Shown here piece after piece: positions 25,211-49,200 of a stretch of DNA of 64,000 nt (within the stretch, counting starts at the first letter, position 1; every line of letters begins with the position of its first letter). The notes beneath the pieces were generated by a model. It did not search any database. It worked only from the letters and a program-made list of their open reading frames with translations, and had not been told where the DNA came from. Position numbers and translations under genes: made by a program. The DNA lies in sequence record KJ019152.1, one strand, 5' to 3'.

Positions 25211-25585
25211 ATGAATACATATGGTTCTCCCGAAGGTTATCTCTTTAACCTTCATACCTGCTCAGCATCAGAAGCGAAGCGAATGTGGAAAGAATCTATA
25301 AAGAATGATTGGAAACATAAATGTGCTTATTGTGGATCGGAACATGAAATTACTTTAGATCATATAGTACCCAAAGCGAAAGGGGGTACTAGTCATACAA
25401 CCAATGTCGTAGCTTGTTGTCGTTCTTGTAACGGGAGTAAGGCATATGAGGATTGGATTATCTGGTATATTCAACAGCCATTCTTCACTGAAGAGAGGAG
25501 GGAGGCTATTGAAAAGTGGATGGAGAAGGGCCTCCTCAACAATAACTTAGTTGCATATCCACCCAGAAGAAATGTCGTTTATTGA
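25211..25585 (+). CDS. HNH endonuclease (CxxC...DH...CxxCN)
   Basis: CAYCG...TLDHIVPKAKGG...NVVACCRSCNGSK. Confidence 0.85.
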   Translation: MNTYGSPEGYLFNLHTCSASEAKRMWKESIKNDWKHKCAYCGSEHEITLDHIVPKAKGGTSHTTNVVACCRSCNGSKAYEDWIIWYIQQPFFTEERREAIEKWMEKGLLNNNLVAYPPRRNVVY

Positions 25586-25801: not shown

Positions 25802-28800
25802 ATGATCTCAACAGCGACTAAGATTAAATTTAAAAGGTCTGGTGTAGCCGGACGTAGACCCTCCTTAGCTGATCTTCAGTTAGGTGAATTGGGGATCAAT
25901 TATAACGATGGTAAACTATTTTTCCGACAGGAAAATGAAGTAGTTGGCTCTCGTATCATTGAACCTGGACAGGGTGATGTAATCGGTAAGACTATTTTCG
26001 TATCCACAAAGGGTAACGATAACAATAGTGGTCTTAACGAAAGAGATGCCAAGAGAACTGTTAAAGCGGCCGCCGCAGTAGCAGAACCTGGTGACTCCAT
26101 CAAACTGTATCCAGGTCAGTACATCGAAGATAACCCTATCGTATTTAAGGATAGGGTATCTGTAGAGGGTATGGAGCTTCGTAACGTTCTCGTTACTCCA
26201 GCCAACCCCAGTAAAGACTTGTATCAAGTTGGTGAGGCGTTCCACGCTACCAACCATTCCTTTGTGTCCAATAGGGATTCAACAGATGGTGCCTCTATTA
26301 TCACCTATCGTCCTCTAGAGGGAACTGCGTCTGACAGGTATTTTGACGCGGCTAGACTCATCAGGGACAATCTTAGCTTCATTGCTAACGAGACAGTAGG
26401 TTTCCTAACCAGTGGATATTCAGGCTTTGCCGCTGGTCAGAGATCACAGGACGCTGCTCGTGCTCTAGAACTAAACAAGAACTTCATAGTAGAAGAAGCA
26501 TTTCAATATATCAACTCTCCTGATTATACAGGAGCCACATACTTCAACCCAGACCCAGCACAGTGTAAGAGAGACCTAGGAAATATCATTGATGGTTGGA
26601 GATATGATCTCATCTCTGATGGTAACACCAGATCTACTGGTCTTGGTCTAACCTACTACGCACCTATTCCCTTTGTGAATAGTGCTAATGTTGCTGACCT
26701 TGTATACAACAGAAATAACGGTGATGTTCTAATTGAAACCGACGTAGATACACAGGTTTCAGTTGGTGAGAAGATCAAACTACAGGATATCAGACTAGAG
26801 TGTGGTTCCTACAATAACGACTTCTTTATCACTGGTTTCAAGTATGATAACACCAGTGGTATTGGAACAGTTAATCTACCCTTTATCCATAACGTCAAGG
26901 TTGGAGACCTTGTTAAGTTTGATGGTTTAGAGTTTGATTGTCCTGCCTATGGTGCCATTGAATATGGTATCCAAGACTTCAAGTATAATGAAACTACTGG
27001 TGGAAGTGTTGTCACACTCACCGAAGATCACGATCTAAAGATTGGTGACACCATTGAACTAAGAGACCTTCAGTTCGATTGTCCCGCCTATGGTGGTGAC
27101 TTCACTAACATCATCAACCTAGAATACAATAAGACCAGTGGTCAGGGTGTTATCACATATGACAAACCCGCCGATCTCAAGTCTGGTGACGTTGTTATCC
27201 TCTATGACCTCACACTAACTTGTGATGCTTATGGTAACGCTATCTCAGTTACTGATTTCTCTTATGATAACTTCACTGGTATCACTGAAGTAGAAGTAAA
27301 TAGACCCCACAACCTCCGTCCCGGAGACCTAATCAAACTAGAGAACCTTAAGTTCTCTTGTGATTCCTACCTTAATGAAACATACAAGGTCTCTAACTTT
27401 GTATATAATGAGAGCACTGGTGATAGTGTCCTCACCCTAACTGAACCACATAGTTTAGTTGCTGGTAAGAACGTCAGACTTGCTGACCTAGTTTTCTCCT
27501 GTAACTCCTATGTTCCAACCGCTAAAGCAATCTCTGATTTCCAGTATGATGAAGTAGTTGGTATCTCTACTATTACTCTAGCATCTCCACACAACTTATC
27601 AGTTGGTGAGCAGTTCAGACTAGAGGACCTAGTATTCTCCTGTAACTCATACTCCTTCACTGATATTCCTATCATTGATGCACCATATGATAATGTAACT
27701 GGTTATGTAACCCTATCGTTCTCTGGTGACCACGGACAACAGGTTGGTGAGAGAGTAAGACTCAGAGATATTGAGTACTCCTGCCCTGGTGGTTCAGGTA
27801 TCACTACAACCTTGTTCCCCGATGGAACCTTTGGTTATGAGTTTGAAATCCTAAGTGTTCCAAACACTAAGAAGATGATTCTTAATGTTGGCACCTCCAC
27901 TATTGAACACTCCTATGTGAGTGGTGGTACTGCTACCGTTGGTATTACAACTACTATCTTCCCTGATGGAACACAAGGTTTCGACTTCAATGTATCCAGT
28001 GTTAATAGTTCCACTGTTATCGAAGCAAGTGTTGGTATTTCTACCATCGCTCACAACTATGTTTCTGGTGGATCATTATTCGTTGGTTTCACTACCACAG
28101 TATTCCCCGATGGAACACAAGGTGATACCTTCAGAGTTAATTCTATTCCTTCTAGCACTCAAATCAGTGTTAATGTTGGTGTATCTTCTATCGCCCATAC
28201 TTTCGTATCCGGTGGTACAGCAACTGACCTAGACTCTTTCATCCCTGTATCTGGTTTCACCTACAATGAAGGTGACGGAACTGGACTAGTATCCCTAGAC
28301 AAGGCACACAACCTAGTGGTTGGTGACTCTTTTGTTCTAGAGGATCTTAAGTTCAACTGTAACTCCTACAGAACAGGTGGTACTTCTACTATTGATATCA
28401 CTAACTTTGAGTATGATAAGGTAACCGGACTATCTACAGTCACACTATCTTCTTCACACAACCTACATGTTAATGATACCGTAGCACTATATGATATCAA
28501 GTTCTCTTGTCCTGGTGGTTCAGGTATTACAACTAATATCTTCCCCGATGGAACCAGAGACAACTTCTATGATGTAGTTGCTGACCTAAACCCCAACCAG
28601 ATTATTGTTCGTGTTGGTAAGTCTGACATTACTCACACATACGCTAGTGGTGGTAGTCTATCCGTTGGTATCACTACTAACATCTTCCCTGATGGAACCA
28701 GACCTTCTGGTGACTTCTTCCAGGTCATCTCTGTCCCCTCTACCAAGTCTGTTCTAACTCAGGTTGGTCTATCCTCTATCGCCCACTCATACGCAAGTGG

Positions 28801-31800
28801 TGGTAAGTTCTACACTGGTATCACTACCAATGTATTCCCACAGGTATTCACTGACCCCAACATCAAGGTAACCAACGCTGTATATGACGAAGTATCTGGT
28901 GTTATCACCATTACTACTAACAAGGCACACGGACTTACCGCTACCGCACCTGTTCTACTACAGGACCTAAACTTCTCTTGCCTCTCTGGTGGTGTAGGAA
29001 ACACCCCAGGCAACCTTGTATTCCCCAGGAACCAGGAAGTTTATGATGTTGTGTCCGTTCTATCTACTACACAATATACGATCAATGTAGGTCCTTCTGA
29101 CTTCGCTCACGCATATGTTGATGGTGGTACTTCTACCACACAGAACATCACTAAGGCATCCTACAACAAAGGAACTGGTGATCTAACAGTAACCCTAGAC
29201 AAGCAACACGGTTATTCAGTTGGTGATCGTGCTAGTGTGGTTGATCTCCTCTTCTCCTGTCAGTCTGGTGGTCCTAACAACCAACCTGGAACACTTCTAT
29301 TCCCTCGTCCTACTGATGAGTATGAAGTTCTATCCGCAAGTGGTAAGACACTCACAGTTAATGTTGGAGCGTTCCCATCACTAGTTCATACCTATAAGAA
29401 TGGTGGATCACTAACCTATAGTTCTACTGTACTTCCTGTAAGTAACGCAGTTTATGATCAATCAACTGGAGTTCTAACACTTACCACATCAATTGCACTA
29501 GGGGCACCTGTTGGTTCTACCATTAAGATGCAGGGTCTAAACTTCTCCTGTGCCTCTGGTGGTCCTGGTAATGACGCTGGTGCTATTGTATTCCCAAGAC
29601 TAGACACCCCTACCTTCAAGGTTAAGGAAGTCAAGAGTGGTGTATCCTATGTTATCAATGTAGGAACCTCTACACTCTCACACACATATACATCTGGTGG
29701 TTTCTCCTCACTCAAGAAGTTGAAGAACGACCCCAATATTTTCAAAGTTATCGACACCCCAACACCTAGTAAGGTTATTACTAATGTAGGTGTCTCATCT
29801 ATCGTTCATGACTATGTGAGTGGTGGTAATATGTTCGTGGGTATCACCACTAATGTATTCCCTGATGGAACTCGCCCTGATGGAAGTAGGTTCGAAGTTA
29901 TCTCCGCCCTATCACCCAACCAGGCACTCATCAACATCGGTGTTTCTACTATCACCCACAACTACGATAGTGGTGGTAGGATGCAGTATGGTACTACCAA
30001 TGAGAGACCTGTTCTAGACTTCCTATACGATGGTCAGACTGGTATCTCCACTGTAACTATTAGAGGAACTCATGGTTTGAACCAGGGTGACCTAGTGAAA
30101 CTCAGAGGTCTTGAGTTCGCTTGTACTAACTCACCTGGTATTACAACTACTATCTTCCCAGATGGAACTGCCGCTGGTCTCAATATCTACAAGGTTACTG
30201 AGATTATTAGTAACAGTACCTTCAAGACAAATGTAGGTAGAGTTGGATTCGATCATACTTACATCCAAGGTGGTTCCGCTTTCGTTGGTATCACTACTAA
30301 CATCTTCCCAGATGGAACACAAGGTTACAACTATACAGTTGCCGCCATTCCTAATAAGAATCAGGTAACAGTTGATGTGGGTATCTCCAGTATCCAACAT
30401 GATTATATTCGTGGTGGATCACTATTCTCTGGTAAGACTAACGAGAGAGATATCGCAGACTTCAAGTATGATCACATCTCTGGTGATGCGGTTCTTACCT
30501 TCAGAAAGGCACAGAACTTATTCACACAAGATCTAGTAAAACTTAAGAACCTTCAGTTTGATTGTCCAAACTCTACTGGTATCACTACTACTCTCTTCCC
30601 AGACGGAACCAGAAGTAACCTCTTCCTAATCAAGGAGAGACTAAACCCAACACAGTTCAAACTCAATGTTGGCACTTCACCATTCGGTCATGACTATGTG
30701 AGAGGAACAGGTCAGGCATTCGTTGGTATCACTACTAACATCTTCCCTGATACCAAGACACAACCAAGTAAGTTATTCAAGGTTGTTGATGTCCCAACTC
30801 CTACTACTATCTCCGCCAAGATTGGTGTATCCACTATCTCCCACTCATATGTTAAGGGTGGTAAGGTATTCGTTGGTATTAACACTGATATCTTCCCTGG
30901 AGATGAGCAAGTATCACCACTAGGTGACACATATACAGTTCAGAGTATCACTAAAGATGGTGAGTTGGTTATCAATGTTGGACTATCTTCTATCAGTCAC
31001 TCCTATGGTGGCGGTGGTAAGGTTCTATATGGACAGAGTTCTGGTAACAACCTACAACATATCACTGGTCCTGGTGTCCTAGATGCAACCATCGCCGCTG
31101 TGGACTTCGAGAAACAGGTAGCAATCAACGCACTAAACAACAGACCTTGGGGTTCATTCGTTCCTGAAGAGACTGCTGTTGTGGAGGCGTTCGCCTATGA
31201 TAACCAGACTGGTTTCGGAACAGTAACCGCTAGGGGAATCAACGTCAACACTGGTGACACCATCAGGATGAGTGACATTCAGTTTGTTTGTTCTGAGGAG
31301 TACGCAGGTGTAACCACTACCTTCTTCCCTGATAATACTAGACCAGAGGGTCAGTACTTTAGAGTAGAAAGAAGAATCAACATCGATGAGTTTGAAGTTA
31401 ATATTGGTGTTTCTACTATCAAACACGTATTCAACTACGAAACAGGTGGTAACGTATATCGTTACAGACAGTCTATTCTAGATGTTAACTACGATAGATC
31501 CAGTGGTATCACTAGTATCCGAGCAACCAAGCATGGTTACAAGGCAAAAGATATTGTGGAACTAGGTGATATCGAGTTCGATTGTCCCGTATTCAAACCT
31601 CAATATGACATTGAGAACTTTGTTTATGATAACACAACTGGTCTATCCACAGTTACTACTACTGTAGATAACACTATCAAGGTAGGTGACAATGTAAAAC
31701 TAGCAGACATCAAACTAGAGTGTCCTCCATATGGTAACCAGAGAGTTATTGATAACTTTGTTTATGATAACAAGAGTGGTCTTTCCACCATATCACTAAC

Positions 31801-34800
31801 AGCAGCACACGGACTCAACCTAAGACCTAGACCTTCTGTTTCTATCTCTACCGCCCTCTATGATAACCAGACTGGTATCCTAACCGTTACCACCAATGCT
31901 GACATCAACTTCACCGATAGAAGTGGTCAGGGTGTTCAACTCAGTGGTCTAAGGTTCTCCTGTGACTCCGCTGGTTTCCCTGGAACTCTCACCTACCCTG
32001 AAGAGAATCTAGTTTATGATATCCTAGAGATTCAGTCTCCTAGTAAGTTTAAGATTAATGTTGGTCTCTCCACTATCGCTCACGAGTATGTGAATGGTGG
32101 TGCCGCTACTAAGGTTGATAGATTCGATGTGAAACTACAGGGTATCAAGTTTGATTGTCCCGCCTATGGAAACACAATCGATGTTACTAACTTCCTATAC
32201 GATCAGAGAAGTGGTAACTCACTAGTTACCGTAGATAAGGCACACAAACTATCTGTTGGTGATAACATCAAACTAGCGGATCTCAAGTTCCAATGTGCTC
32301 CATATGGTAACGATTACAATGTTCTAAACGCAGATTACGACAACACAACTGGTATTATTACAGTAACCACTAACCAAAACATCAACGGTGTTGGTGTTGG
32401 TGATACTATTCGCCTCTCCAGACTACAGTTTGATTGTGTAGGTAGTGGTCCTGAGTATAATATCACTAACGTATTCTTCAATACTGGTAACAGATCAGTT
32501 ATTCTCACAGTTCCTGAAAGACCAATTGGTCTAAACCCAGGTGATGACATTAAACTAACCAATATGTCATACCTAGAAGGTGGTAGTGGTAATGTAGTTG
32601 CGTATCCAGACGGAAGAGATTCGAGTCTAAACATCTTCCGTATCAATGATGTTCAACCTAACTCCATTCTCCCTGGATACTTCGATGTAACCACAGCGTT
32701 CCCCAATGTTAAGGATCCTTTCGCGATCTTCAACAATACTGGTAGACTAACCACTGGTATTACTACTAACATCTACCCTGAGAATGTAGGTGCTGAAGGT
32801 GGTTTCTATGAAGTTATCCGCCTAAGACAAGATAACCAGTTTGAGATTCAGGTAGGAACCTCTACTATCACTCACAACTATGTGAGACAAGGACAGATGT
32901 TTACTGGTGTAACCACCAACTTCTTCCCTGGTAACCTACAGAACTCACCTAGAGGAAACATCTTTGAGATTGTGGAAGTTCCCACAGCAACACAGGTGAG
33001 AATCAATGTAGGTGTATCTTCTATCTCTCATAGTTATGATAGTGGTGGTCAGATGTTTGTTGGTATTACTACTAACATCTTCCCTGATGGAACCAGAGGT
33101 AACCTATTCCCAGTTGTTGGAGTGGCAAATACTCTCACCCTAAGAATCGACGCTGGTGTATCCAGTATTCCTCACAACTATGTTTCTGGTGGAGAACTAT
33201 TCGTAGGTATTACAACTAATATCTTCCCTGGTAACTCACAGAACTCACCAAGAGGTAGTATCTTCAAGGTTCTATCTAAGGATAACGAGTGTGGTGCTGA
33301 TAGATTCACTATCAATGTTGGTGTATCTTCCATCACTCACGGTTATGTTGAGGGTGGAACAGTCACCACTGGTGTTACAACTAACAAGTTCCCTGATGGA
33401 ACACACGGATTCAAGTTCCCTGTTATCGATGTTCTAGATGACAACTACTTCACCGTGAATGTTGGTACTTCTACTATCACTCACAACTATATCTCTGGTG
33501 GTTTCACTAGAAGACTTGAAGTTCCTATCAATAGTTTCGTATATGATAGAGTTTCTGGTCTATCCACAGTGGGTATCCAAAGTCACAGAATGAATATCGG
33601 TGACCTTGTGAAACTTCGTGATGTGAAGTTCAACTGTGATCCATATGGTGGAGAAAAGACTATCTCTGGTGTTGTTTATGATAATACCTCTGGTAGAATG
33701 ACCGTTAACACCACTGGTTCTCATAGTCTAAACATCAATGATGTTGTGAAACTCTCCAATATTCAGTTGGATTGTTCCCCATATGGTAACGAGAGAACTA
33801 TTACCGCCGCCACCTACAACAGAAACAATGGAAACCTAAGTGTTCAGGTATCTGAACCTCACAACCTCAAGATTAGTGAGAATGTGAAACTTAAAGGTTT
33901 AGAGTTCTCCTGTTCCTCAGAACACGCAGGTGTGACAACAACAATCTTCCCAGATTCAACCGCACCTTCTCTAAACATCTACGCCATCCAGAGTATCACC
34001 AACTCCACAACCTTCATGGTTAATGTTGGAACCTCTACTATCAGTCACAACTATGTTTCTGGTGGTTCCGCTTTCGTAGGTATCACAACTAACATCTTCC
34101 CAGGTGATAGCCAGAACTCCCCCAGAGGTTCTTTCCTCAGTGTGGTAGATATCCCAGCATCAGACGCCTTCGTGGTGAATGTAGGGGTTTCTACTATCTC
34201 TCACGGGTATGTTAGAGGTGGATTGGTTCAGACAGGTATTACAACTGATGTATTCCCTGATGGAACACAGAGTGATTTCTTCAAGATTGAAGATGTCCCT
34301 AGTAATAATACAGTTGTAATCAACGCAGGTATCTCTTCTATCATCCATAGATACAACTCTGGTGGTTTCGCCGCCAAGTATGTTACCTATCAGTCCAATA
34401 ACTCACAACTACTTGATAGTTCTGTTATTAGAGTGAGTGGTGATTGTATGGCAGTTGGTGAGAGAGTTGAAGAACTCGCAGGTATTGTTACCTCCATCAT
34501 CAAGAATGGTCCTTCAATCGCACCTGGTGGTATTCCAGTAGATGTGGTAAGTGCATCCTACGACCAGTCTGGTGGAGCACTATCAGTCACAGTCAAAGAC
34601 GCAATTGACCTCACACCAACTAACATAGTTAGAATCGAAGGTCTTATCTTCGAGTGTGAGTCCTCTGGTGTAACAAACACTCGTGTATATCCTGACAATA
34701 AGGTATTCAACTATGAGGTTCTATCAGTTCAGTCTCCAACAACCTTCACTATCAATGTAGGTTCTCAGGCAGATATCCCACACACATATGTGAATGGTGG

Positions 34801-37705
34801 AACTGTAAGACCAGGTAACAAGTTTGATGTGGCAACCGCAACCTACAATACTGAAAATGGTATTGTGAGAGTTACTACCACTGAAGATAACTACTTGGTT
34901 CTTGGTAGAGGAGTTAACCTACAGGGTCTAAACTTCTCCTGTACCTCTGGTGGTCCTAACAACAAACCTGGAACACTAACCTTCCCCGACAAAACACCAA
35001 CCAATGTAACCGCCGCCACATATGATAGTGTGACTGGTGTATTACGTATCACAACCAACAGACCTCACCAAGCATACAAGGACGCGTTTGTATCCCTAAA
35101 CGGACTAACCTTCACTTGTGATCCAGGTGGTCCTCTAGTATTCCCTAGAAACCCTGATACTAAGTCCTTCAGAGTTACTAAGAGAGTTGATGACTACACA
35201 TATGAGTGTCAGTTGGCACCGACCAATAAGGTTCATACTTATCTAAGTGGTGGTACTTCCTCCACAGGAAACGGAAACTTCAGAGTTTCTCGTCTCATTG
35301 ATACAAAGACCTTCGAAGTCACAATGGTTCCTCTAGATCTACCACATACCTATGTAAATGGTGGTTCCGCCGCTAGTGTATTCACTAGACAGATCATTGA
35401 TGGAATCAACATCAACACTAGGAAGTGTGCTAGAGACGTTAGACGTATCTACCTCGCAGTGGCACACGATATCACTCGTGGTGGTAACTGGAAGTGTGTT
35501 GAAGGAGCGAAACTCTACTACGATAACGTGGGTCAAACCAAGTTTATCTCTGGTGGTGAAGTAAATCAAACCGTTGAGGCACTTGACTTCTCCCTAAACA
35601 TTGTTAGATGTTTAATCAACAACGTAACATGGGGTGGAGTTCCAAGAGGATATCTCACTAAGGGTGAGAGAAGTGAACTAAGAATTCCATCTTCAGCTAA
35701 GACTTCAGTGGTTGGTTTCAGACAACAACTACTTTCCAACCAATACACTACTCAGAAGAAGAGTATTTCTGGTATGGTATACGATAACCTTACGGGTATC
35801 GCAACCGTCACCACTAAACTCTCACATGAACTCATCAAGTATGATGGTATTCAACTCTCAGATATTGAGATGAGATGTACTGGTAGTCCAAGGATTACCA
35901 CCAATGTATTCCCTGATGGAACACAAGGTGAGATCTTTGAGGTTATGGAAACTCTAGATGATAGAGTATCATACATCGTAACTGACGCGTCATACACCAA
36001 CACCACTGGTAAGTTGGTAGTAACAACAACAGGAAACAATGATATTCCTGTTGGATCAAGAGCAAAACTAGATGGTTTACTCTGGACTTGTTCATACGAT
36101 CCTTCAAAACAACTTAAGTTCCCAGAGAACAGGAAGTTCCGTTATGAGGTTATCGCAAAACCAGATGGTACAACACTAGAGTTCAATGTTGGTATCTCTA
36201 CGATTCCACACACATTTGTTCCAGCTCCTATAGATGTTGAATACACAGTCAAGGAGGATCCAGTTAAGTTTAAGGTTCATGTTGGTACAGTTTCCTTCCC
36301 ACACACCTACTTCGGTGGTGGAACAGTATGGCACAAACTACCATTCACTCCACCTTTCACCCAAACACAGATCAAGGACGTATCACAACAGAAAGATCCA
36401 GTCCAGTTCTCTAACAATACTCCTAACGGATGTGCTAATGTATTCTCCGCTATCAGTAATTGTATTGGTGTTGTTACTAGTATCGTAGCAAATGGATTAG
36501 AAGGATCAGGTATCTCCACAACTTATCCAGGTAATGATGGTAAAGGTGTTCCAACTATGGATGAGATGCCTTCACAGGGTGTTGGTAACATTATCAAAGG
36601 TCCATACATCAGAAACTGTACGAACTTCGTTCCCAAGTCTATTGGTATGAGAATGGATGGTTTCGACGCGGAACCTGGTGATGAAATCTCCAATGGTGTT
36701 CAAGGTTCATCTAACGTTGACTCCTTCACCCAGTTCAACCCTGGTGGTGTTGGTTGTTCCATCTCTAACGGAACCTACCAACAGTTGGTTTCTATCTTCA
36801 CTATCTGTTGTGATGAAGCAATCGTATGTGACTCTGGAGCACAACTCGACCTCACTAACTCCAACTCTTCCTTCGGTAGATTGGGTCTAGTCGCAAGAGG
36901 TATTGGTGATAAACTCTCCAAGTGTATCGACAGATATACTGGTATCGTCGCCAAAGAGGCATCAATCGAAGATGACCTAGTTGTTGTGAAGGGTATTGGT
37001 GATAAGAGACCCTACGATGGTCAGGGTATTTTCTTCGGAGAACTCTTCAGGGATGTGGTTAGTATCGAAGTTCTGGACGGTGGTTCAGGTTACAACGATG
37101 ATATTCCACCTAACGCGTTTGTCGCAGAACCTACTGGTCCCGCTGGTATTAAGGCGGAAGTTTCACCAACAGTCAGAGATGGTGTTGTTGTTTCTATCGA
37201 GGTTATCGCAAATGGTAACCAATACAGAGAGAAATTCCCTGAGGTTGTAATATCACCTCCTAAGAGTCCTCTTGGTAGAACCGCAAAAGCAAGGGCAATT
37301 ACCGAACCTCTCTACTATAATGTAGAAAGTTCTTCCCCACCTGAAGAGGGTACAACTAGTATCATTTTCAAACAGCGTCTAAATAATACCGTATCGGTAG
37401 GCACAACTGTATTCTTCTCTAGATTGAGTCTACAGATTGCCTCCTCTCACTCCTTCGAATACATTGGTGCTGGTAACAGCATTAACGGAGCAAGACCTTC
37501 TGAAGGTGGAGTTCCAATTAAGGAAAATGAGATCGTGAAGGAAGACGGTGGTTCAATTGTCTATACCTCCACTGACCAGGCAGGTAACTTTAACATTGGT
37601 GACGATTTCGTTATCAACCAGTTCACTGGTACTATCACTGGTAGATCGTTCGATCAATCAGTCCTAAATAAAGTTACTCCACTCATCATCGCCCTAGACA
37701 GTTAA
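25802..37705 (+). CDS. giant virion structural protein (3967 aa) with nested repeat domains
   Basis: Late promoter; fibre-type N-terminus KRSGVAG...LQLGELGINYNDGKLF; split beta-helix; helical bundles; 31 split repeats. Confidence 0.85.
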   Translation: MISTATKIKFKRSGVAGRRPSLADLQLGELGINYNDGKLFFRQENEVVGSRIIEPGQGDVIGKTIFVSTKGNDNNSGLNERDAKRTVKAAAAVAEPGDSIKLYPGQYIEDNPIVFKDRVSVEGMELRNVLVTPANPSKDLYQVGEAFHATNHSFVSNRDSTDGASIITYRPLEGTASDRYFDAARLIRDNLSFIANETVGFLTSGYSGFAAGQRSQDAARALELNKNFIVEEAFQYINSPDYTGATYFNPDPAQCKRDLGNIIDGWRYDLISDGNTRSTGLGLTYYAPIPFVNSANVADLVYNRNNGDVLIETDVDTQVSVGEKIKLQDIRLECGSYNNDFFITGFKYDNTSGIGTVNLPFIHNVKVGDLVKFDGLEFDCPAYGAIEYGIQDFKYNETTGGSVVTLTEDHDLKIGDTIELRDLQFDCPAYGGDFTNIINLEYNKTSGQGVITYDKPADLKSGDVVILYDLTLTCDAYGNAISVTDFSYDNFTGITEVEVNRPHNLRPGDLIKLENLKFSCDSYLNETYKVSNFVYNESTGDSVLTLTEPHSLVAGKNVRLADLVFSCNSYVPTAKAISDFQYDEVVGISTITLASPHNLSVGEQFRLEDLVFSCNSYSFTDIPIIDAPYDNVTGYVTLSFSGDHGQQVGERVRLRDIEYSCPGGSGITTTLFPDGTFGYEFEILSVPNTKKMILNVGTSTIEHSYVSGGTATVGITTTIFPDGTQGFDFNVSSVNSSTVIEASVGISTIAHNYVSGGSLFVGFTTTVFPDGTQGDTFRVNSIPSSTQISVNVGVSSIAHTFVSGGTATDLDSFIPVSGFTYNEGDGTGLVSLDKAHNLVVGDSFVLEDLKFNCNSYRTGGTSTIDITNFEYDKVTGLSTVTLSSSHNLHVNDTVALYDIKFSCPGGSGITTNIFPDGTRDNFYDVVADLNPNQIIVRVGKSDITHTYASGGSLSVGITTNIFPDGTRPSGDFFQVISVPSTKSVLTQVGLSSIAHSYASGGKFYTGITTNVFPQVFTDPNIKVTNAVYDEVSGVITITTNKAHGLTATAPVLLQDLNFSCLSGGVGNTPGNLVFPRNQEVYDVVSVLSTTQYTINVGPSDFAHAYVDGGTSTTQNITKASYNKGTGDLTVTLDKQHGYSVGDRASVVDLLFSCQSGGPNNQPGTLLFPRPTDEYEVLSASGKTLTVNVGAFPSLVHTYKNGGSLTYSSTVLPVSNAVYDQSTGVLTLTTSIALGAPVGSTIKMQGLNFSCASGGPGNDAGAIVFPRLDTPTFKVKEVKSGVSYVINVGTSTLSHTYTSGGFSSLKKLKNDPNIFKVIDTPTPSKVITNVGVSSIVHDYVSGGNMFVGITTNVFPDGTRPDGSRFEVISALSPNQALINIGVSTITHNYDSGGRMQYGTTNERPVLDFLYDGQTGISTVTIRGTHGLNQGDLVKLRGLEFACTNSPGITTTIFPDGTAAGLNIYKVTEIISNSTFKTNVGRVGFDHTYIQGGSAFVGITTNIFPDGTQGYNYTVAAIPNKNQVTVDVGISSIQHDYIRGGSLFSGKTNERDIADFKYDHISGDAVLTFRKAQNLFTQDLVKLKNLQFDCPNSTGITTTLFPDGTRSNLFLIKERLNPTQFKLNVGTSPFGHDYVRGTGQAFVGITTNIFPDTKTQPSKLFKVVDVPTPTTISAKIGVSTISHSYVKGGKVFVGINTDIFPGDEQVSPLGDTYTVQSITKDGELVINVGLSSISHSYGGGGKVLYGQSSGNNLQHITGPGVLDATIAAVDFEKQVAINALNNRPWGSFVPEETAVVEAFAYDNQTGFGTVTARGINVNTGDTIRMSDIQFVCSEEYAGVTTTFFPDNTRPEGQYFRVERRINIDEFEVNIGVSTIKHVFNYETGGNVYRYRQSILDVNYDRSSGITSIRATKHGYKAKDIVELGDIEFDCPVFKPQYDIENFVYDNTTGLSTVTTTVDNTIKVGDNVKLADIKLECPPYGNQRVIDNFVYDNKSGLSTISLTAAHGLNLRPRPSVSISTALYDNQTGILTVTTNADINFTDRSGQGVQLSGLRFSCDSAGFPGTLTYPEENLVYDILEIQSPSKFKINVGLSTIAHEYVNGGAATKVDRFDVKLQGIKFDCPAYGNTIDVTNFLYDQRSGNSLVTVDKAHKLSVGDNIKLADLKFQCAPYGNDYNVLNADYDNTTGIITVTTNQNINGVGVGDTIRLSRLQFDCVGSGPEYNITNVFFNTGNRSVILTVPERPIGLNPGDDIKLTNMSYLEGGSGNVVAYPDGRDSSLNIFRINDVQPNSILPGYFDVTTAFPNVKDPFAIFNNTGRLTTGITTNIYPENVGAEGGFYEVIRLRQDNQFEIQVGTSTITHNYVRQGQMFTGVTTNFFPGNLQNSPRGNIFEIVEVPTATQVRINVGVSSISHSYDSGGQMFVGITTNIFPDGTRGNLFPVVGVANTLTLRIDAGVSSIPHNYVSGGELFVGITTNIFPGNSQNSPRGSIFKVLSKDNECGADRFTINVGVSSITHGYVEGGTVTTGVTTNKFPDGTHGFKFPVIDVLDDNYFTVNVGTSTITHNYISGGFTRRLEVPINSFVYDRVSGLSTVGIQSHRMNIGDLVKLRDVKFNCDPYGGEKTISGVVYDNTSGRMTVNTTGSHSLNINDVVKLSNIQLDCSPYGNERTITAATYNRNNGNLSVQVSEPHNLKISENVKLKGLEFSCSSEHAGVTTTIFPDSTAPSLNIYAIQSITNSTTFMVNVGTSTISHNYVSGGSAFVGITTNIFPGDSQNSPRGSFLSVVDIPASDAFVVNVGVSTISHGYVRGGLVQTGITTDVFPDGTQSDFFKIEDVPSNNTVVINAGISSIIHRYNSGGFAAKYVTYQSNNSQLLDSSVIRVSGDCMAVGERVEELAGIVTSIIKNGPSIAPGGIPVDVVSASYDQSGGALSVTVKDAIDLTPTNIVRIEGLIFECESSGVTNTRVYPDNKVFNYEVLSVQSPTTFTINVGSQADIPHTYVNGGTVRPGNKFDVATATYNTENGIVRVTTTEDNYLVLGRGVNLQGLNFSCTSGGPNNKPGTLTFPDKTPTNVTAATYDSVTGVLRITTNRPHQAYKDAFVSLNGLTFTCDPGGPLVFPRNPDTKSFRVTKRVDDYTYECQLAPTNKVHTYLSGGTSSTGNGNFRVSRLIDTKTFEVTMVPLDLPHTYVNGGSAASVFTRQIIDGININTRKCARDVRRIYLAVAHDITRGGNWKCVEGAKLYYDNVGQTKFISGGEVNQTVEALDFSLNIVRCLINNVTWGGVPRGYLTKGERSELRIPSSAKTSVVGFRQQLLSNQYTTQKKSISGMVYDNLTGIATVTTKLSHELIKYDGIQLSDIEMRCTGSPRITTNVFPDGTQGEIFEVMETLDDRVSYIVTDASYTNTTGKLVVTTTGNNDIPVGSRAKLDGLLWTCSYDPSKQLKFPENRKFRYEVIAKPDGTTLEFNVGISTIPHTFVPAPIDVEYTVKEDPVKFKVHVGTVSFPHTYFGGGTVWHKLPFTPPFTQTQIKDVSQQKDPVQFSNNTPNGCANVFSAISNCIGVVTSIVANGLEGSGISTTYPGNDGKGVPTMDEMPSQGVGNIIKGPYIRNCTNFVPKSIGMRMDGFDAEPGDEISNGVQGSSNVDSFTQFNPGGVGCSISNGTYQQLVSIFTICCDEAIVCDSGAQLDLTNSNSSFGRLGLVARGIGDKLSKCIDRYTGIVAKEASIEDDLVVVKGIGDKRPYDGQGIFFGELFRDVVSIEVLDGGSGYNDDIPPNAFVAEPTGPAGIKAEVSPTVRDGVVVSIEVIANGNQYREKFPEVVISPPKSPLGRTAKARAITEPLYYNVESSSPPEEGTTSIIFKQRLNNTVSVGTTVFFSRLSLQIASSHSFEYIGAGNSINGARPSEGGVPIKENEIVKEDGGSIVYTSTDQAGNFNIGDDFVINQFTGTITGRSFDQSVLNKVTPLIIALDS
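26680..36340 (+). repeat. 31 A-halves (YDxxTG...HxLxxGDxVxLxDLxFxC) and 31 B-halves (GITTxxFPDG...VNVGxSxIxHxYxxGG) in four blocks
   Basis: Hand parse: 15, 11, 3 and 2 pairs at about 26680-31030, 31170-34380, 34530-35380 and 35750-36340. Confidence 0.85.
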
Positions 37706-37709: not shown

Positions 37710-38060
37710 ATGGCAGCAGTTGCTTTAAATACGTTCAAAACGGTCAGGCATTTAGTTTCTGATTCCAATGTGGGGATTTATACATCCCCCATTGGTGTTG
37801 CCTCTATTGTCCTATACGCTCAGGCGACACACGTTGCGAACGATGAAAGTGTATATTTCATTAACTTTTCACATGCTCGTCCCGACGAGGATCCTGTGCA
37901 GTTTGAAATCATTAAGGATGGTCCAGTTATCCCTAATGACGCACTAAACCTATTAACAGGTAGATTAGTTCTCGAAACTGGAGACGAACTTAGAGTATCA
38001 GGAAATACGACCGGAGATGTGAAGGTTGTTGTTTCTATTCTAGAGACTGCAAAGTCTTAA
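37710..38060 (+). CDS. small structural protein coupled to the giant gene
   Basis: 116 aa, predicted beta-rich; 4 bp after the giant gene stop. Confidence 0.65.
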   Translation: MAAVALNTFKTVRHLVSDSNVGIYTSPIGVASIVLYAQATHVANDESVYFINFSHARPDEDPVQFEIIKDGPVIPNDALNLLTGRLVLETGDELRVSGNTTGDVKVVVSILETAKS

Positions 38061-38092: not shown

Positions 38093-41000
38093 ATGCCTCT
38101 AAATTATCTTACCGGAAGAGTAAGTAGATTACAAGTTGGATTTCCAGGGTTTTCAACAGCAAAGGACCTTACAGTTGATGTAGCAGGTGCCATTGGTATT
38201 GATACCCAAAACCCAAGAGCAGCTGCCGACTTCCCAGATGTCAGTATCCGTGGTGATATTGTTGACTCTGTTGGATTTACCGGTGGTATTGGGTATTTTC
38301 TAGCGCAAGATGTTCAGGGTGTTCGGTGGGTAGAGGCTCCACCAATCAACTCTAACGCCATCTTAGTGTTAGACAATGGAGTTATCGTTGGTGCTGGATC
38401 ATTCATTGGTTTAAACTTTGACTCTGGTAAGGATGAGGACTTCCTCTCGGTTGTTCCTGACCCACTAAACCCACAGATTGCAAAGATTGCATATGATGTT
38501 CGTTGGGTAAGATATAATTACGGTAATAATAAAGGTATCTCCACAGGTTTTGGAGATAATGGTGACTACTCCTCTATCCCTGGTTATGGAACCACAGAGG
38601 CAGTTGGTGTTACCTCAGTTGGTATTGGTACTAACCAACCACTAGATGACTTCCAAGTTGGTATTGGATCTACTGGTGTTACTATCAACGGACCTCTAGG
38701 TCTAGTTGATGCAGAAATTATTAAAGCAAAATCAATCTCGGTTGAAGGAAACCTAGAGGTTGAATCACTTATTGTTAGACCTGGTGTTGCCACTCTAACC
38801 ACTCTAGATGTATTGAACGAGGCGTTCATACCAGTAGAGTATGTTGGTTTCTCCAGCATTCAAGATGCAAATATTGATGCTCTCTTTGCTAATCAGTTAC
38901 TAGCAGGTATTACTACCCTAGGTTTCGGTGGTGAAGATGTATTCATCCTCAACGACTTATATGTTCAGGGTGGTTTAGGTACCTTCGATGGCGACGTATT
39001 CGTTGGTGGAGACCTAACTGTTAAGGGTGAGACGTTCTTCAACCAGATTAACGCAGTCAACTTATCAGTATCTGGTATTGCCACTATCGTCCAAGCGGAG
39101 ATAGCTGTTGGTTTAGTTACCGATCTAAAAGTATCTGGTTTCTCTACACTATCAGATTTCTCATTCAACATTGGTGTTGGTACATACCTAGAACTAGAAG
39201 ATCTAGATGTATCTGGTGTTGGTAGTTTTGGTGTTGTCAACTCTGGTGATATTAATGTTAGTGGTGGTTTAACCGCTAGTGAGATTGATGCAGATAAGGG
39301 ATACATTGGTATTCTCACAGCAGACTCTATTGTATCTGGTGCAGGTACTATTGGTTCTATCGAGTCTGATGGGAACCTAACAACACTTAATGATATTATT
39401 GTTGGTGGTGCTTCAACCTTCGTTGGTTTGGGTACTTTCCAAGACGATCTCTTTGTTGGTGGTGACCTCTTTGTTAGAGGTGATGTTACCTTTAAGAATA
39501 TTAATGGTGAACAACTACTAATCAGTGGTATTGGTACCATCAAGGAACTAGTCTTTGATAGTGGTATTGGAACCTCACTAGAAGTGAGAGATCAGATTAC
39601 GACTGGTATATCTACGATCAATGAAGCAGATATTCAAGATGCCGCTGTTGAGAGACTCACTGTTGGTGATGCAGAGATCATCGGTATCGCAACTATTACC
39701 GAGATTGATGTAGATAGGGGTAGAGTTGGTATCCTAACTGGTACAGACCTCTCCTATGCTGGTATCGGTACTATCACGGAGATTGATGTTGACCAGGGTA
39801 GAGTTGGTCTAGTCACTGGTGACACACTACTATACTACGAACAGTCTAGGATCAATAGAGTTACCTTCTTTGATAACTACCTATCAGTTAATCAGAGTCT
39901 AAGAGTTTCTGGTCTCTCCACCTTTGTTGGAACAGGTACATTCTTTAATGACTTGTATGTTGGTGGTGACCTATATGTTGCTGGTGAACTAAACTTCAAA
40001 CAACTCAATGGTGAGAACCTATACCTAACTGGTGTTGGTACCATCTATGATTTACGTAACACTGTTGGTTTCATTACTAACCTCTACGTAGAAGAGTCTG
40101 TAACTGGTTTAGCAACCATCAGTAGTCTAGTTGGTTCTTCCGCTACCATCACAGACTTCACTGGACAGTCACTACTCATCCAGAATCCATTCAACCCAAT
40201 GCCTTTGGATCCAACTGGGATCCCAGGACAGGGTGTTATTGATAGTCTCCTAGTTAGAAACCTAACTTCTTCTAACAACATTCTAGCCAATGACATTGAT
40301 GCCAACTTCGTTGACACCGATGATCTAAAGGCTGGTGTTGGTACTATCACTGACCTAGAGTGGACTACCGCTGTTGGTGATGACACTACTACCAATACTC
40401 TACAGGTTACTGATACAGCAACCATTAACATCATCGATGCCAATCAGATCGATGCCGAAGATGCTAATATTGGAGTTGCCACCCTCTCTAGTCTCCTAGT
40501 AACTGGTGTCACTACCTTCAAGGGTCAGGTTGATATTGAGGATATTGAGTTCGTTGACCAGAGTGTCACCGGTATTTCCTCTATCAACATCCTCAAGTTC
40601 AATGTTGGTTATGGAACTTACCTAGAGGTCACTGACTCAGTAACTGGTGTTGGAACTATTGGTCTTGCCAGTATCACAACCGCTCAGGTATCCTTCCTAG
40701 ATGTAAGAGATGAGGTAGTTGGAGCATCCACTATTGGTGTTCTATCAGTAACTGAAGGATTTGCAGTATCTGGTTTCTCCACCTTTGTTGGTTTCACTAC
40801 CTATAAAGGAGATGTATTTGTTGATGGTAACTTAACTGTTACTGGTTTCGTTAGTTTCACACAACTAAACGCTGATCAATCACAGATTGGTATCCTAACT
40901 GTATTCGATGCGTTAGACGCTAGAACGGGTGTTGGTACATTCAAACACCTAGAGACAGTAGATAGTGCAGTTCTATCAGGTGTATCTACCATTGGACTCA

Positions 41001-43699: not shown

Positions 43700-43770
43700 A
43701 ACACCTCTCCCACTCCCTCTATAAATATCTGTATATCTAACACTGCAGATTATAGGGGGAATGTGAACCC

Positions 43771-46203: not shown

Positions 46204-46261
46204 TAAATACAAATACGGCTCAATGAGCCCTTTTGTACGTACACAAAGGAGAAAAACCTAA

Positions 46262-49200
46262 ATGGCATATTTACTTTCTAATGGGGGCGTTATTATTAAC
46301 GACTCCAGAGAAATCGTAAATGCTGGGGTTGTAACTGCTACTGCGTTCTTTGGGGACGGTTCTGGTTTATCTGGAATCGCAACCATTTCTGATGGGGGAA
46401 TCTCCATCGGCGACGCAAACATCACTGGAAACTTAAATGTTTCTGGTATTTCTACCGTAGAATTCTTAAACGCTTCTGACATTAATGTCGGCGGTGCTTT
46501 AACAGTCACAGGTGATCTATCTGTCGGTGGTGATTTATCTTTTGATGAGGTTTCTGGTAGAAACCTAAACATCACTGGTATTTCCACACTCGGAACAGTT
46601 AAGATTTCAAATGGCATTGTAACCGCCACTAGTGGCGTTGTTACATATTACGGTGATGGTAGCAATCTAACCGGCATTGACATCACAGATAGTGATGTAA
46701 GACTCAGAAACCTTTCGGTTACTGGTGTCTCTACATTCACAGGTGATGTATCTTTTGGAGCAAACGCTTCTCTAGTAGGCGACCTAACTTCTGGTCGTAA
46801 CGCAAACCTTTCAGGTATTGCGACAGTAAATGATATCTATATTGATAACTTACTTTATGATTCCAACAATAATGTTGGAGCAGCTGGTTCAATTCTTGTA
46901 ACCGCAGGTGGAAAGTTACAGTGGCTACCGCCCGATCAAGCGGGTATTGCTACAGTATTCCAACCAGGAAATACATTCTTTGTTTCTAAGAATGGTGATG
47001 ATAGTAGTGATGGTCTCTCCATGGAGAAATCATTTGCTACCATTTCCTACGCTCTGTCTCAGATTTCATCAGGGACAAACAACGTTCTCTTAATCACCGC
47101 TGGTGATTATGAAGAAGTATTCCCACTATCAGTTCCCGATGGACTGACTGTTAAGGGTGTTGGACAACGTGCGGTTCTAGTTAGACCCACTTCAGCTACA
47201 GAAACCAACGATGGTTTCCAACTTGGTAACGCATCCACAGTTGAAGATTTGACCATTGGTCAGATGTTTAAACCTCAAGGTGCTTCCAATAATAACTACG
47301 CTTTCACATATAGAAGTGGTGCTACCATTTCATCTCGTGGACCTTATGTTTCTAGAGTTACGGTTCTAAACAAAGGTAGCGTAACTTCTACCTCTGACCC
47401 ATTTGGATATGGTTCAGCTGATGCTTATCCAACGACTGCCCCTGGTGGTGCTGGTGTATTGGCTGATGGTAGTGTTCTTAACTCCGCCTCACTAGAAGCC
47501 TCATTCCTACTTAACGAAGTCACCACCTTCACTGCCGGTAACATCGGTATTGATATGGTCAACGGTGCTCGTGTTGAGTGGTTGAATGGTTTCTCCTACT
47601 TCGCATCCGAGGGTGTTAAAGGTAGAGCTGACCAGTCAACTGGTTTGTATGGTGCAGGTAAGACGAGACTAAGAGTTGAGAACGCCTCTGGTGGTCTAGT
47701 CAATGGTAATACCATTGAACTCTATGATATTGATGGCACGACTAGCCTTGCTAGTGGTACTATTGACGGCACCAGTGGTGCATACACGACCCTGACTACT
47801 GGTGGTACTGGTACCTTCGCTATTGCAGGAAGTCGTAAGGCGAAAGCTGCCTCATTCGTTGATACAGCCTCTCTATCTACAACACAAGCCAAATTCGGGA
47901 ATGCTTCACTAGATGTAACTGGTCAGTCTACTGATTGTATCAATGTTGATCCAAGCAGTGACTTCGGTTTCGGTACTGGTGACTTTACAGCTGAATTCTG
48001 GTTGTATAGAACATCAGCTACTGCTGGTGCTACTATTCTCGATATGAGAGATGCAGCTGATACTGATTCAGCTCTATCTATTAGAGAGAACACTAGTGAT
48101 GTTATTGAAGTTCTTGTCGGCAACTCTGTTGTTCTAACTTCATCCACAAGTGCTATTGGTAATGCCGCTTGGTATCACATTGCTGTTGCCCGTTTGGGTA
48201 GCACAATGGAACTATTCATTAATGGTGCCCAGGAAGCTTCAGCATCCAATTCATCTGACTTAGGTCTAAGCCAGTCACTCACCTTTGGTGCTGACTATGC
48301 TAACGCCAATGGTACTATTGCGTTCTTAGATGAACTCCGTATCGAGAAGGGTGCTGCTAAGTACACGAATCCGTTTACTCCTTCCACTGTACCCCTTGAG
48401 GGTGACCGTGGTACAGCTATCCTACTCCACTTTGATGGATCAAATGGAGCAACTGAAGCTCCTGATGATATTCAGATATTCCAGGATATCCGTATCAGTG
48501 GTGGTAACACAGCTGATAGACTATCACTTGCTGACTACAGTCAGTTTGGTGCTGAGTTGCGTTCCTCTGGTTGTGCTGTTGAGTATGGTAACAAAGGTGT
48601 CGTCGGAGACGGTGCTGGTGTTGCTCTAAGACTCATCGGTATTAACTTCAGTTTCGTAGGTGCCCTAGGTGATCTAACTAACGATCCAAACCTAGCCGTT
48701 CAGGCTAATGAAGTTACAGAAACCAACAATGCTGAGGTATCTTTCACCAGTATTGATCAAGGTGGTGACTTCCGTGTTGGTGAATCCTTCTATGTTAACC
48801 AGGAAACTGGTGATGTATCATTCAACAACACAACAACTGATCTAACCTCACTATCTAGTCTAACCATCACTGATGGTACTAACAACTCACTTATCACTCC
48901 TACCTCTGGTAGATTTGGTAATGTTCAGATCTCTGGACAGCAAGTTGCTTCTGTATCTGGTGACCTAGACCTAGTAACCGCTGGTGGTGGTGAAGTTAAC
49001 ATCTACGGTAATACTAACGTTGTTGGTATTCTAACCGCACAGGTTGTTGAGATCAACGCTATCCAGAAGGGTGATACTTCTATCGCTCTAGATGATACCG
49101 GTACTGATGGTACTATCCGGTTTAACACCGATGGTTCTGAGGCAGGTAGATTCACTAAGGATAACGACCTTGCAGTAACACACAACTTCCGCGTTGGTGG

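What the first reader, a model, noticed from the sequence alone, without database searches (positions are those of the whole stretch)
32450..32760. Conserved Cys (A half) and His (B half) are lost together in one bracket-matched pair
Seen: 30 of 31 A halves end in Cys and 30 of 31 B halves carry His in xHxY/F. The only A without Cys (TNMSYLEGG) is closed by the only B without His (FPNVKDPFAIFNNTG). Inference: Cys and His interact across the halves, either as a metal site that locks the outgoing and returning strands or as a Cys-His dyad repeated 30 times. Some A halves carry another His (HxL) that could be a third ligand.
Basis: partly seen in the sequence, partly recalled or inferred. Interest (0 to 1): 0.72.

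Follow-up and report, generated by a model that had tools for sequence, protein, structure and literature searches.

The report
Cys–His staple in nested phage barrels
A 3,967-residue tail-fibre-like protein of a marine cyanophage is built from 31 small beta-barrels, each made of an outgoing and a returning piece of the chain, and one cysteine in the first piece and one histidine in the second are kept or lost strictly together, which indicates (from covariation and models, not a solved structure) that the two residues touch and that the pieces pair like nested brackets.

Summary
The ORF at 25802..37705 (+) belongs to a Synechococcus phage ACG-2014f-type myovirus. It has 31 A halves and 31 B halves, whose order forms a balanced bracket word. 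Thirty A halves end in Cys and 30 B halves carry HxY/F. The single exception of each kind forms one adjacent unit (aa 2216-2316, nt 32447-32749).

In the window alone the chance of this is 1/31. Across 30 orthologues the test is decisive. Of 877 unit-pairs, 821 are Cys+His, 55 have neither, 1 has Cys only and 0 have His only. There are at least 10 joint changes, three in pairs 146-633 residues apart.

Direct-coupling analysis ranks Cys-His as the top inter-half coupling (4.47, against 0.36-1.46 for wrong pairings). AlphaFold2 gives a confident ~95-residue beta-barrel in which Cys ends strand 3 and His begins strand 7.

A metal ion is not shown. Only two residues are invariant, the proposed third ligand (HxL) is uncoupled, and in remote relatives His is replaced by Gln/Thr/Ser, or Lys takes the place of the alternative His, while Cys stays. 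I favour a metal-free polar staple, with a metal site as the main rival. The module has no Pfam family and no solved structure.

The parts
25802..37705 (+). Giant ORF of 3,967 aa, a tail-fibre-like virion protein. GenBank relatives annotate it as 'hypothetical protein'.
   Evidence: (phrog_3442; phrog_17885 and phrog_5342 'tail fiber protein')
26678..36325 (+). Repeat region, aa 293-3508. It holds 31 A halves and 31 B halves in a balanced bracket order, in seven depth-0 blocks separated by non-repeat linkers.
32447..32590 (+). Odd A half, aa 2216-2263. Glu2259 (nt 32576-32578) occupies the Cys column.
32591..32749 (+). Odd B half, aa 2264-2316. Asp2305 (nt 32714-32716) occupies the His column. 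This column is Asp or Glu in 28 of 31 orthologues.
32306..32449 (+). A half ending in Cys2212 (nt 32435-32437). This is the next bracket outwards, enclosing the odd unit.
32741..32896 (+). B half carrying His2358 (nt 32873-32875), partner of Cys2212. The two are lost together in P0027-P0030.
31466..33505 (+). Six-deep hairpin block, aa 1889-2568. The odd unit sits at its innermost position. The block contains the long-range pairs Cys1928/His2561 and Cys2119/His2458, and an A half that is split by an inserted AB unit.
33512..34369 (+). AAABBB block, aa 2571-2856, modelled with AlphaFold2 (pLDDT 85.5).
33785..34075 (+). Single canonical AB unit, aa 2662-2758 (Cys2704/His2749), modelled with AlphaFold2 (pLDDT 87.4, pTM 0.79). 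Cys is the last residue of strand 3 and His is the first residue of strand 7.

Best explanation
Each bracket-matched A half and B half fold into one beta-barrel of about 95 residues. A supplies strands 1-3 and B supplies strands 4-7. Further barrels are inserted between the two halves, up to eight deep, so the chain runs out through the A halves and back through the B halves.

The Cys is the last residue of strand 3, at the point where the chain leaves for the next inner barrel. The His is the first residue of strand 7. The two strands lie side by side and antiparallel, so the two side chains face each other at the distal mouth of the barrel. There they act as an obligate pair that pins the outgoing half to the returning half.

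I think the contact is most likely a direct polar one, a thiol or thiolate to imidazole hydrogen bond or ion pair, set in a small conserved cluster with Tyr A11, Ser B41, Ile B43 and Tyr B47. It does not require a metal.

Shown here: the pairing of halves, the coupling of Cys and His, and the strand layout of the model. Inferred: the side-chain contact and its chemistry.
For: 1. Joint loss. In an alignment of the window protein with 30 orthologues, Cys and His are lost in exactly the same sequences for seven different units. These include pairs 146, 339 and 633 residues apart (2212/2358, 2119/2458, 1928/2561), while units lying between them keep both residues.
2. Counts. Of 877 unit-pairs, 821 are C+H, 55 have neither, 1 has Cys only and 0 have His only.
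3. Independent events. On the tree there are at least 10 joint changes against 1 single change.
4. Within single genomes, the probability that the losses coincide by chance is 2e-6 to 5e-5 for P0027-P0030.
5. Mean-field DCA gives C43-H45 = 4.47. That is the top inter-half coupling and the second highest long-range coupling overall. Twelve fixed wrong pairings give 0.36-1.46.
6. Using only the 17 non-adjacent pairs, the coupling is 3.01, against 1.54 or less for shifted or shuffled pairings. Using only adjacent pairs, it is 3.61 and again the top coupling.
7. Neighbouring couplings A40-B49, A42-B48 and A44-B46 fit an antiparallel strand 3 / strand 7 ladder.
8. AlphaFold2 models are confident: pLDDT 87.4 for one unit and 85.5 for AAABBB. 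Cys ends strand 33-43 and His begins strand 88-96.
9. Split halves that enclose complete AB units show real domain insertion.
10. For a metal-free polar contact: where Cys is kept but His is replaced, the replacement is Gln (7), Thr (5) or Ser (3, plus 1 in P0022). Where Cys is also gone, the replacement is Tyr, Arg, Leu, Phe, Ala or Val. In the related tandem 'C..D...H.YPR' units the alternative His alternates with Lys, 143 against 44.
Against: No coordinates were available, so the Cys-His distance was never measured. The DCA signal rests on 31 orthologous sets and is not free of phylogenetic structure, although the fixed wrong pairings control for this. An invariant free Cys and an invariant His in an extracellular protein are classic metal ligands, and Cys at this position is far more conserved than simple packing would need. 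Replacement pairs such as Thr/Arg or Glu/Val suggest partial solvent exposure rather than a buried hydrogen bond. The Gln/Thr/Ser replacements may come from only a few lineages.
Confidence: 0.5

Rival explanations
1. Metal clamp. Cys and His are two ligands of a metal ion (Zn, Fe or Cu), one per barrel. Water, a backbone group or a nearby Tyr completes the site, and the ion locks strand 3 to strand 7.
For: Cys and His are near-invariant and co-vary tightly. His is almost never found without Cys: 0 of 877 and 1 of 216. The related 'C..D...H.YPR' units offer Cys, Asp and His close together. Phage fibres are known to hold metal ions on conserved His, for example the T4 gp37 HxH iron sites as described in PMC11705849.
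Against: Only two residues per unit are invariant. The candidate third ligand A26 His is uncoupled and missing from 12 of 30 Cys/His units. Cys persists with Gln, Thr or Ser in place of His, and His alternates with Lys in type-2 units. Neither pattern is typical of metal ligands. There is no sequence match to any metal-binding family.
Confidence: 0.3
2. No direct interaction. Cys and His disappear together only because whole units, especially fast-evolving tip units, degenerate or are replaced as a block.
For: The odd unit is the most variable unit across orthologues (mean identity 0.37, against 0.41-0.68 for the others). Several units that lose Cys/His are among the next most variable innermost units. 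Other motif positions (Ser B41, Ile B43, Gly A16) also decay when Cys/His go.
Against: Three joint losses are in halves 146-633 residues apart, in units of average conservation (0.52-0.56), and the intervening units keep Cys/His. In unit 1928/2561 of P0028 and P0029 the rest of both halves stays well conserved: the NVG motif is kept, while the FPDGT loop and Ile B43 also change. The replacement residues differ between units, so a single donor copy is excluded. Cys-His is the strongest inter-half DCA coupling in two disjoint subsets.
Confidence: 0.1
3. Covalent cross-link. Cys and His form an intramolecular bond in each barrel, playing the role that isopeptide or ester bonds play in bacterial pilin and adhesin repeats.
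For: The arrangement is the same: one conserved residue pair per repeat, joining an early and a late strand of each module of a long thin extracellular fibre. Both residues are strictly co-dependent in the giant-protein clade.
Against: To my knowledge, no self-generated Cys-His cross-link is known outside copper enzymes. No conserved catalytic acid accompanies the pair. Cys is kept with Gln, Thr or Ser partners.
Confidence: 0.05
4. Catalytic Cys-His dyad repeated 30 times.
For: Only the identity of the two residues and their proximity.
Against: No peptidase or hydrolase family matches the protein or 148 single units. The fold is a small all-beta barrel of the E1-FCCH / endosialidase-barrel class. 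The protein lies among tail-fibre and baseplate genes. Thirty tandem active sites in a structural rod have no precedent that I know of.
Confidence: 0.03

Closest known systems
T4 gp37 long-tail-fibre tip with HxH iron sites (described in PMC11705849, which cites Bartual et al. 2010)
   Same: It is a phage fibre in which the chain runs out and back, and in which conserved His on the outgoing and returning strands are held together along the axis.
   Different: gp37 is a trimeric interdigitated needle. It uses HxH motifs, with six His per Fe. Here the modules model confidently as monomeric barrels, the motif is a single Cys plus a single His (xHxY/F), and no metal has been shown.
Cyanobacterial RNA polymerase Si3 insertion, built of sandwich-barrel hybrid motifs (PMC10895346)
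   Same: It is an elongated array of repeated small beta motifs in which the chain folds back on itself, and several motifs are assembled from distant parts of the sequence.
   Different: The fold family and the context are different. It has eight motifs with about four discontinuous ones, against 31 barrels nested up to eight deep here. No conserved Cys-His pair is reported for it.
E1 ubiquitin-activating enzyme FCCH domain (PF16190; PDB 2v31) and the phage endosialidase beta-barrel (PF12195; PDB 4hiz, 3ju4)
   Same: These are small beta-barrels that occur as insertions inside other domains. They are the best Foldseek matches (TM 0.56-0.57), and 23 of 148 units give sub-threshold Pfam hits to PF16190.
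   Different: The matches are weak: Foldseek E is 0.04 or worse and the Pfam hits are below the gathering score. Homology is therefore unproven. I know of no reported equivalent Cys-His pair in them; I did not check this.
Intramolecular isopeptide and ester cross-links in Gram-positive pilin and adhesin repeats (from general knowledge, not checked here)
   Same: They use one conserved residue pair per repeat to tie an early strand to a late strand in long, thin, mechanically loaded extracellular fibres.
   Different: Those pairs are Lys-Asn/Asp or Thr-Gln with a catalytic acid, and they are covalent. Here the pair is Cys-His and a covalent bond is unproven.

Membership tests
PHROG tail-fibre families (phrog_3442, phrog_17885, phrog_5342) | Significant HMM match | tested here: met
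   phrog_3442 matches the full length with E = 0. phrog_17885 'tail fiber protein' matches with E = 0 in 16 stretches. phrog_5342 matches with E = 1.8e-66.
T4 gp37-type HxH iron site | Paired His in HxH motifs on the outgoing and returning strands | tested here: not met
   each B half has one His, in xHxY/F. The partner residue is a Cys in the A half.
T4 gp37-type HxH iron site | Trimeric interdigitated needle with the metal on the three-fold axis | not testable with these tools
   No multimer modelling or coordinates were available. The monomer models are confident barrels, which argues against an obligate intertwined trimer.
Classical structural Zn site | Three or four conserved Cys/His/Asp ligands within one module | tested here: not met
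   only C43 and H45 are invariant. A26 His is present in 62% of units and is uncoupled (DCA -0.03 and -0.04).
Cys-His dyad hydrolases (papain-like, NlpC/P60, sortase and similar) | Match to a peptidase or hydrolase family or fold | tested here: not met
   no such Pfam match; the fold is an all-beta barrel whose best structural matches are non-catalytic insertion barrels.
E1_FCCH / endosialidase beta-barrel fold class | Pfam match above the gathering score | tested here: not met
   PF16190 is hit by 23 of 148 units, with a best E of 3.3e-4, all below the cut-off.
E1_FCCH / endosialidase beta-barrel fold class | Structural superposition with TM above 0.5 and a significant Foldseek E-value | tested here: inconclusive
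   2v31 gives TM 0.56, rmsd 5.0 Å, E = 0.042. 4hiz gives TM 0.57, E = 0.053.
Self-cross-linked adhesin or pilin repeats | Lys-Asn/Asp or Thr-Gln pair with a catalytic Glu/Asp, and a covalent bond | tested here: not met
   the conserved pair is Cys-His and no conserved acid accompanies it. Covalency itself cannot be tested with these tools.
Nested repeat arrays such as RNAP Si3 SBHMs | Modules assembled from sequence-distant segments | tested here: met
   halves up to about 1,400 residues apart co-evolve as one unit; split halves enclose whole units. This resemblance is architectural only.
Nested repeat arrays such as RNAP Si3 SBHMs | Homology to the SBHM fold | tested here: not met
   RNAP beta-prime chains appear only with Foldseek probability 0.04-0.06; no Pfam match.

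The most novel reading that the evidence does not exclude
Every barrel of this recursively nested fibre holds a metal ion on its Cys-His pair. That would be 30 ions per chain, multiplied by the copies per virion. The giant cyanophage fibre proteins would then be a previously unrecognised metal-loaded structure in the surface ocean, relevant to the 'Ferrojan horse' idea of phage-bound trace metals. They would also be a new way of stapling a fold-back fibre.
Probability: 0.3. Interest if true: 0.85.

Novelty: new variant of a known kind. Interest (0 to 1): 0.74.

Why it matters
The Cys-His coupling is the cleanest available evidence that halves of the chain up to about 1,400 residues apart belong to the same small domain. 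That means a 3,967-residue virion protein is built by recursive domain-in-domain insertion up to eight levels deep. This is far deeper than the known precedent, the RNA polymerase Si3 insertion.

The coupling also defines an undescribed module: no Pfam family, no solved structure, and 683 sequence clusters in 1.84 billion proteins. The module recurs in fibre and baseplate proteins of marine cyanomyoviruses, which are abundant viruses of major primary producers.

The pair gives a simple handle for experiments on how such fibres fold and resist stress. If a metal is bound, it also bears on the trace-metal content of marine viruses.

Tried and rejected
- Measuring the Cys-His distance. The prediction tool returns no coordinates and /data holds none, so covariation and the DSSP strand layout had to stand in.
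- PDB sequence searches. The whole protein, the C-terminal part, the AB-unit profile and the type-2 unit profile gave nothing meaningful. The iota-carbonic-anhydrase hit has no significant stretch.
- Foldseek of the three-barrel model against the PDB gave only noise, with E of 0.005 or worse and TM of 0.24 or less.
- The HxL His as a third ligand was rejected.
- Complementarity of an alternative His before YPR with a strand-7 His in type-2 units was not found (Fisher p = 0.86).
- A/B units in other ORFs of the window: none found.
- An apparent 1.35-kb length difference in KJ019152 was an alignment artefact. That CDS is also 11,904 nt.
- Transfer of the adjacent-pair DCA contacts to the non-adjacent pairs was only partial. 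The sum was 5.1 against -2.2 to 1.5 for wrong pairings, and it was driven mainly by the Cys-His coupling.
- Literature searches found no description of this module or of its nesting.
Full report
**Context**

The window is 99.9% identical to Synechococcus phage ACG-2014f (Kyanoviridae, Atlauavirus), a T4-like cyanomyovirus. The finding lies inside one intact ORF, 25802..37705 on the + strand, 3,967 aa with no breaks. GenBank relatives annotate it as 'hypothetical protein'. It has no Pfam family and no sequence relative in the PDB. It matches PHROG families called 'tail fiber protein'. It sits among genes that PHROGs call baseplate wedge and tail fibre; an HNH endonuclease gene lies just upstream and psbA further upstream.

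**Checking the observation**

I listed every Cys and His of the protein.
- Thirty Cys sit at the end of the A-half motif GD.V.L.DL.F.C.
- Thirty His sit in the B-half motif NVG.S.I.H.Y/F..GG.
- TNMSYLEGG (aa 2253-2261) and FPNVKDPFAIFNNTG (aa 2300-2314) are the only A end without Cys and the only B end without His.
- Alignment puts Glu2259 in the Cys column and Asp2305 in the His column.

Read as brackets, the 31 A and 31 B halves form a perfectly balanced word. The depth reaches 8 and returns to 0 at aa 1733, 1875, 2561, 2849, 2994, 3182 and 3501. Where non-repeat linkers occur (after aa 1733, 2849 and 3182), the depth is 0. The odd A and odd B are an adjacent innermost pair.

From the window alone the chance that the two exceptions fall in one unit is 1/31.

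**The architecture is real domain insertion**

HMMs built from the halves revealed three split halves:
- The A half ending at Cys2119 has its first 29 positions at aa 1978-2006. A complete AB unit (Cys2054/His2094) sits between that part and the rest.
- The B half with His1336 starts at aa 1001-1015 and resumes at aa 1311, with three AB units in between.
- The B half with His3501 is split by one AB unit.

Orthologues carry extra AB units inserted exactly between a Cys and the start of its B half. Bracket words are conserved across 89 homologues, for example AAAAAABBBBBB.

**The decisive test: covariation in a larger alignment**

The search for homologous proteins returned 30 collinear orthologues at 45-98% identity, plus more distant giants. 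In a MAFFT alignment of the 31 proteins I read the residue in each Cys and His column. Losses coincide unit by unit:

| Unit (Cys/His) | Lost together in | Note |
|---|---|---|
| 2054/2094 | P0008, P0019, P0027-30 | |
| 2212/2358 | P0027-30 | 146 residues apart |
| 2119/2458 | P0027-29 | both kept in P0030; 339 residues apart |
| 1928/2561 | P0028, P0029 only | 633 residues apart |
| 2704/2749 | P0027-30 | |
| 2952/2994 | P0027-30 | |
| 3106/3145 | P0029 | both kept in P0028 |
| 2259/2305 (odd unit) | all orthologues | His column is Asp or Glu in 28 of 31 |

The only single change is His to Ser at 2801 in P0022.

- Of 877 unit-pairs, 821 are C+H, 55 have neither, 1 has Cys only and 0 have His only.
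- On a FastTree phylogeny these are at least 10 joint changes on the same branches against 1 single change.
- Within single genomes, the probability that the A losses and B losses coincide by chance is 4e-6 (P0028), 2e-6 (P0029), 2e-5 (P0027) and 5e-5 (P0030).

Units lying between the long-range pairs (2165/2410, 1974/2513) keep both residues in every sequence. Regional decay therefore cannot explain the pattern. The replacement pairs differ from unit to unit (Ala/Tyr, Thr/Arg, Tyr/Tyr, Glu/Val, Asp/Leu and others), so copying from one donor is also excluded.

**Contact evidence**

Mean-field direct-coupling analysis on the 47+52 match columns of bracket-matched halves gave these results:
- Cys A43 - His B45 is the top inter-half coupling (4.47) and the second highest long-range coupling overall.
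- Twelve fixed wrong pairings gave 0.36-1.46 for that pair. They also gave about half the total inter-half signal, 17-21 against 36.
- With only the 17 non-adjacent pairs, the coupling is 3.01 and the top-20 sum is 43, against 21-26 for pairings shifted by one level or shuffled.
- With only adjacent pairs, the coupling is 3.61 and again top.
- Further couplings A40-B49, A42-B48 and A44-B46 fit an antiparallel ladder between the Cys strand and the His strand.

AlphaFold2 with alignments made from natural units gave confident all-beta models:
- AAABBB (aa 2571-2856): pLDDT 85.5.
- One AB unit (aa 2662-2758): pLDDT 87.4, pTM 0.79. Its strands are 4-12, 17-22, 33-43, 52-55, 65-73, 76-80 and 88-96.

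Cys43 is the last residue of strand 3 and His88 is the first residue of strand 7, as an antiparallel pairing of those strands requires.

**What the module is**

- Foldseek against the PDB found no significant match. The best hits are small insertion barrels: Uba1 FCCH 2v31 (TM 0.56), the phi92 and K1F endosialidase barrel (TM 0.57), the P22 coat I-domain and the F1-ATPase N-terminal barrel.
- Consistently, 23 of 148 units give sub-threshold Pfam hits to E1_FCCH and one gives a hit to the endosialidase barrel.
- Against predicted viral structures, the unit recurs (TM 0.75-0.9) in cyanophage proteins named endosialidase, long tail fiber, fiber, tail protein and baseplate wedge initiator.
- A profile of the unit finds 683 clusters at 50% identity among 1.84 billion proteins.

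**Chemistry**

Only Cys and His are invariant. When they are lost, Ser B41, Ile B43, Tyr B47 and Gly A16 also relax.

The His of HxL (A26) is present in 18-19 of 31 A halves, has no coupling to Cys or His (-0.03 and -0.04), and survives the loss of Cys/His in units 1928, 2704 and 3106.

In 144 remote cluster representatives the rule becomes asymmetric. Among adjacent units, 169 are C+H, 40 have Cys only, 6 have neither and 1 has His only.
- Where Cys stays, the His column becomes Gln (7), Thr (5) or Ser (3).
- Where Cys is gone, it becomes Tyr, Arg, Leu, Phe, Ala or Val.

Many Cys-only units belong to a second, tandem type with the motif SL.F.C..D.....H.YPR..DP. There a His two residues before Tyr (143 of 203) alternates with Lys (44), and shows no complementarity with a strand-7 His.

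His/Lys and His/Gln/Thr/Ser exchanges are what a polar partner of a thiol would tolerate, and are atypical of metal ligands. This is why I place a metal-free polar staple (0.5) above a metal site (0.3). On the other side, invariant Cys and His in an extracellular fibre, and the known HxH iron sites of T4 gp37, keep the metal reading alive. A covalent link (0.05), block degeneration without contact (0.1) and a catalytic dyad (0.03) are less likely.

**The odd unit**

It is the most variable of the 31 units across orthologues (mean identity 0.37, against 0.41-0.68 for the others). It sits at the innermost turn of a six-deep hairpin. It keeps its own conserved features: YPDGRD, Tyr instead of Phe two residues before the Cys column, and an acid in the His column. 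It looks like an old, specialised tip barrel rather than a decaying copy. A receptor-facing role is possible but untested.

**Comparison with what is known, and novelty**

- The fold-back-and-clamp logic resembles the T4 gp37 tip, but the defining features of that site (HxH motifs, trimeric needle) are not met.
- The nesting resembles the RNA polymerase Si3 array of sandwich-barrel motifs, where several motifs are built from distant segments (PMC10895346). The fold differs, and the depth here is roughly twice as great.
- One residue pair per repeat recalls the cross-linked repeats of pilins, but with different residues.
- I found no paper describing this module, its nesting or its Cys-His pair.
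- I rate it a new variant of a known kind.

**Verdict**

The inference that Cys and His interact across the halves is strongly supported. A metal is unproven, the third-ligand idea is rejected, and a catalytic dyad is unlikely.

Noticed in passing
window 26678-36325 (aa 293-3508): The 62 halves form a balanced bracket word up to 8 deep. Three halves are split by whole AB units: the A half of Cys2119, split at aa 2006/2106; the B half of His1336, split at aa 1015/1311; and the B half of His3501, split at aa 3387/3480. The protein appears to be built by recursive domain-in-domain insertion, possibly with side branches.
   Followed up: yes
window 32447-32749 (aa 2216-2316): The Cys/His-less unit is the fastest-evolving of the 31 units (mean identity 0.37 across orthologues). 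It still keeps YPDGRD and an Asp or Glu in the His column in 28 of 31 orthologues. It may be a specialised tip barrel at the innermost turn of a six-deep hairpin.
   Followed up: partly
window 26009-26179 (aa 70-126): The N-terminal region gives a sub-threshold match to DUF1565 (E = 0.003, below the cut-off), a family I recall as a right-handed beta-helix. From reading the sequence, the C-terminal ~450 aa may also be beta-helix-like. If so, the whole repeat array may itself be an insertion into another domain. The C-terminal part had no Pfam or PDB match.
   Followed up: partly
P0004 aa ~2055-2148 and ~3045-3133; P0022 aa ~3272-3360 (aligned to window aa 2054, 2952, 3106): Orthologues have gained extra complete AB units, inserted exactly between a unit's Cys and the start of its B half. 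The array therefore grows by balanced insertions at that loop.
   Followed up: partly
P0085 aa 900-1700, P0086 aa 900-2700 and many cluster representatives (P0095-P0225): Remote relatives carry a second, mostly tandem (not nested) unit type with the motif SL.F.C..D.....[H/K].YPR..DP. There are 203 non-redundant copies. Cys, Tyr-Pro and Asp-Pro are invariant, and there is no PDB or Pfam match beyond sub-threshold E1_FCCH.
   Followed up: partly
window 25211-25585: A small HNH endonuclease ORF (phrog_2214, E = 1.6e-37) lies immediately upstream of the giant gene. It is annotated 'putative endonuclease' in KJ019152.
   Followed up: no
window 37710-38060: The 116-aa ORF just downstream shares phrog_1276 with aa 851-926 of the giant protein, but has no A or B HMM hit.
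   Followed up: no
window 38093-52132: Three further large ORFs (1,868, 810 and 1,956 aa) match the PHROGs 'baseplate wedge subunit/initiator' and long-tail-fibre C-terminal families. None contains A/B units by HMM.
   Followed up: no
window 16623-17726: A photosystem II D1 (psbA) gene, the usual cyanophage auxiliary metabolic gene, lies 8 kb upstream of the giant gene.
   Followed up: no
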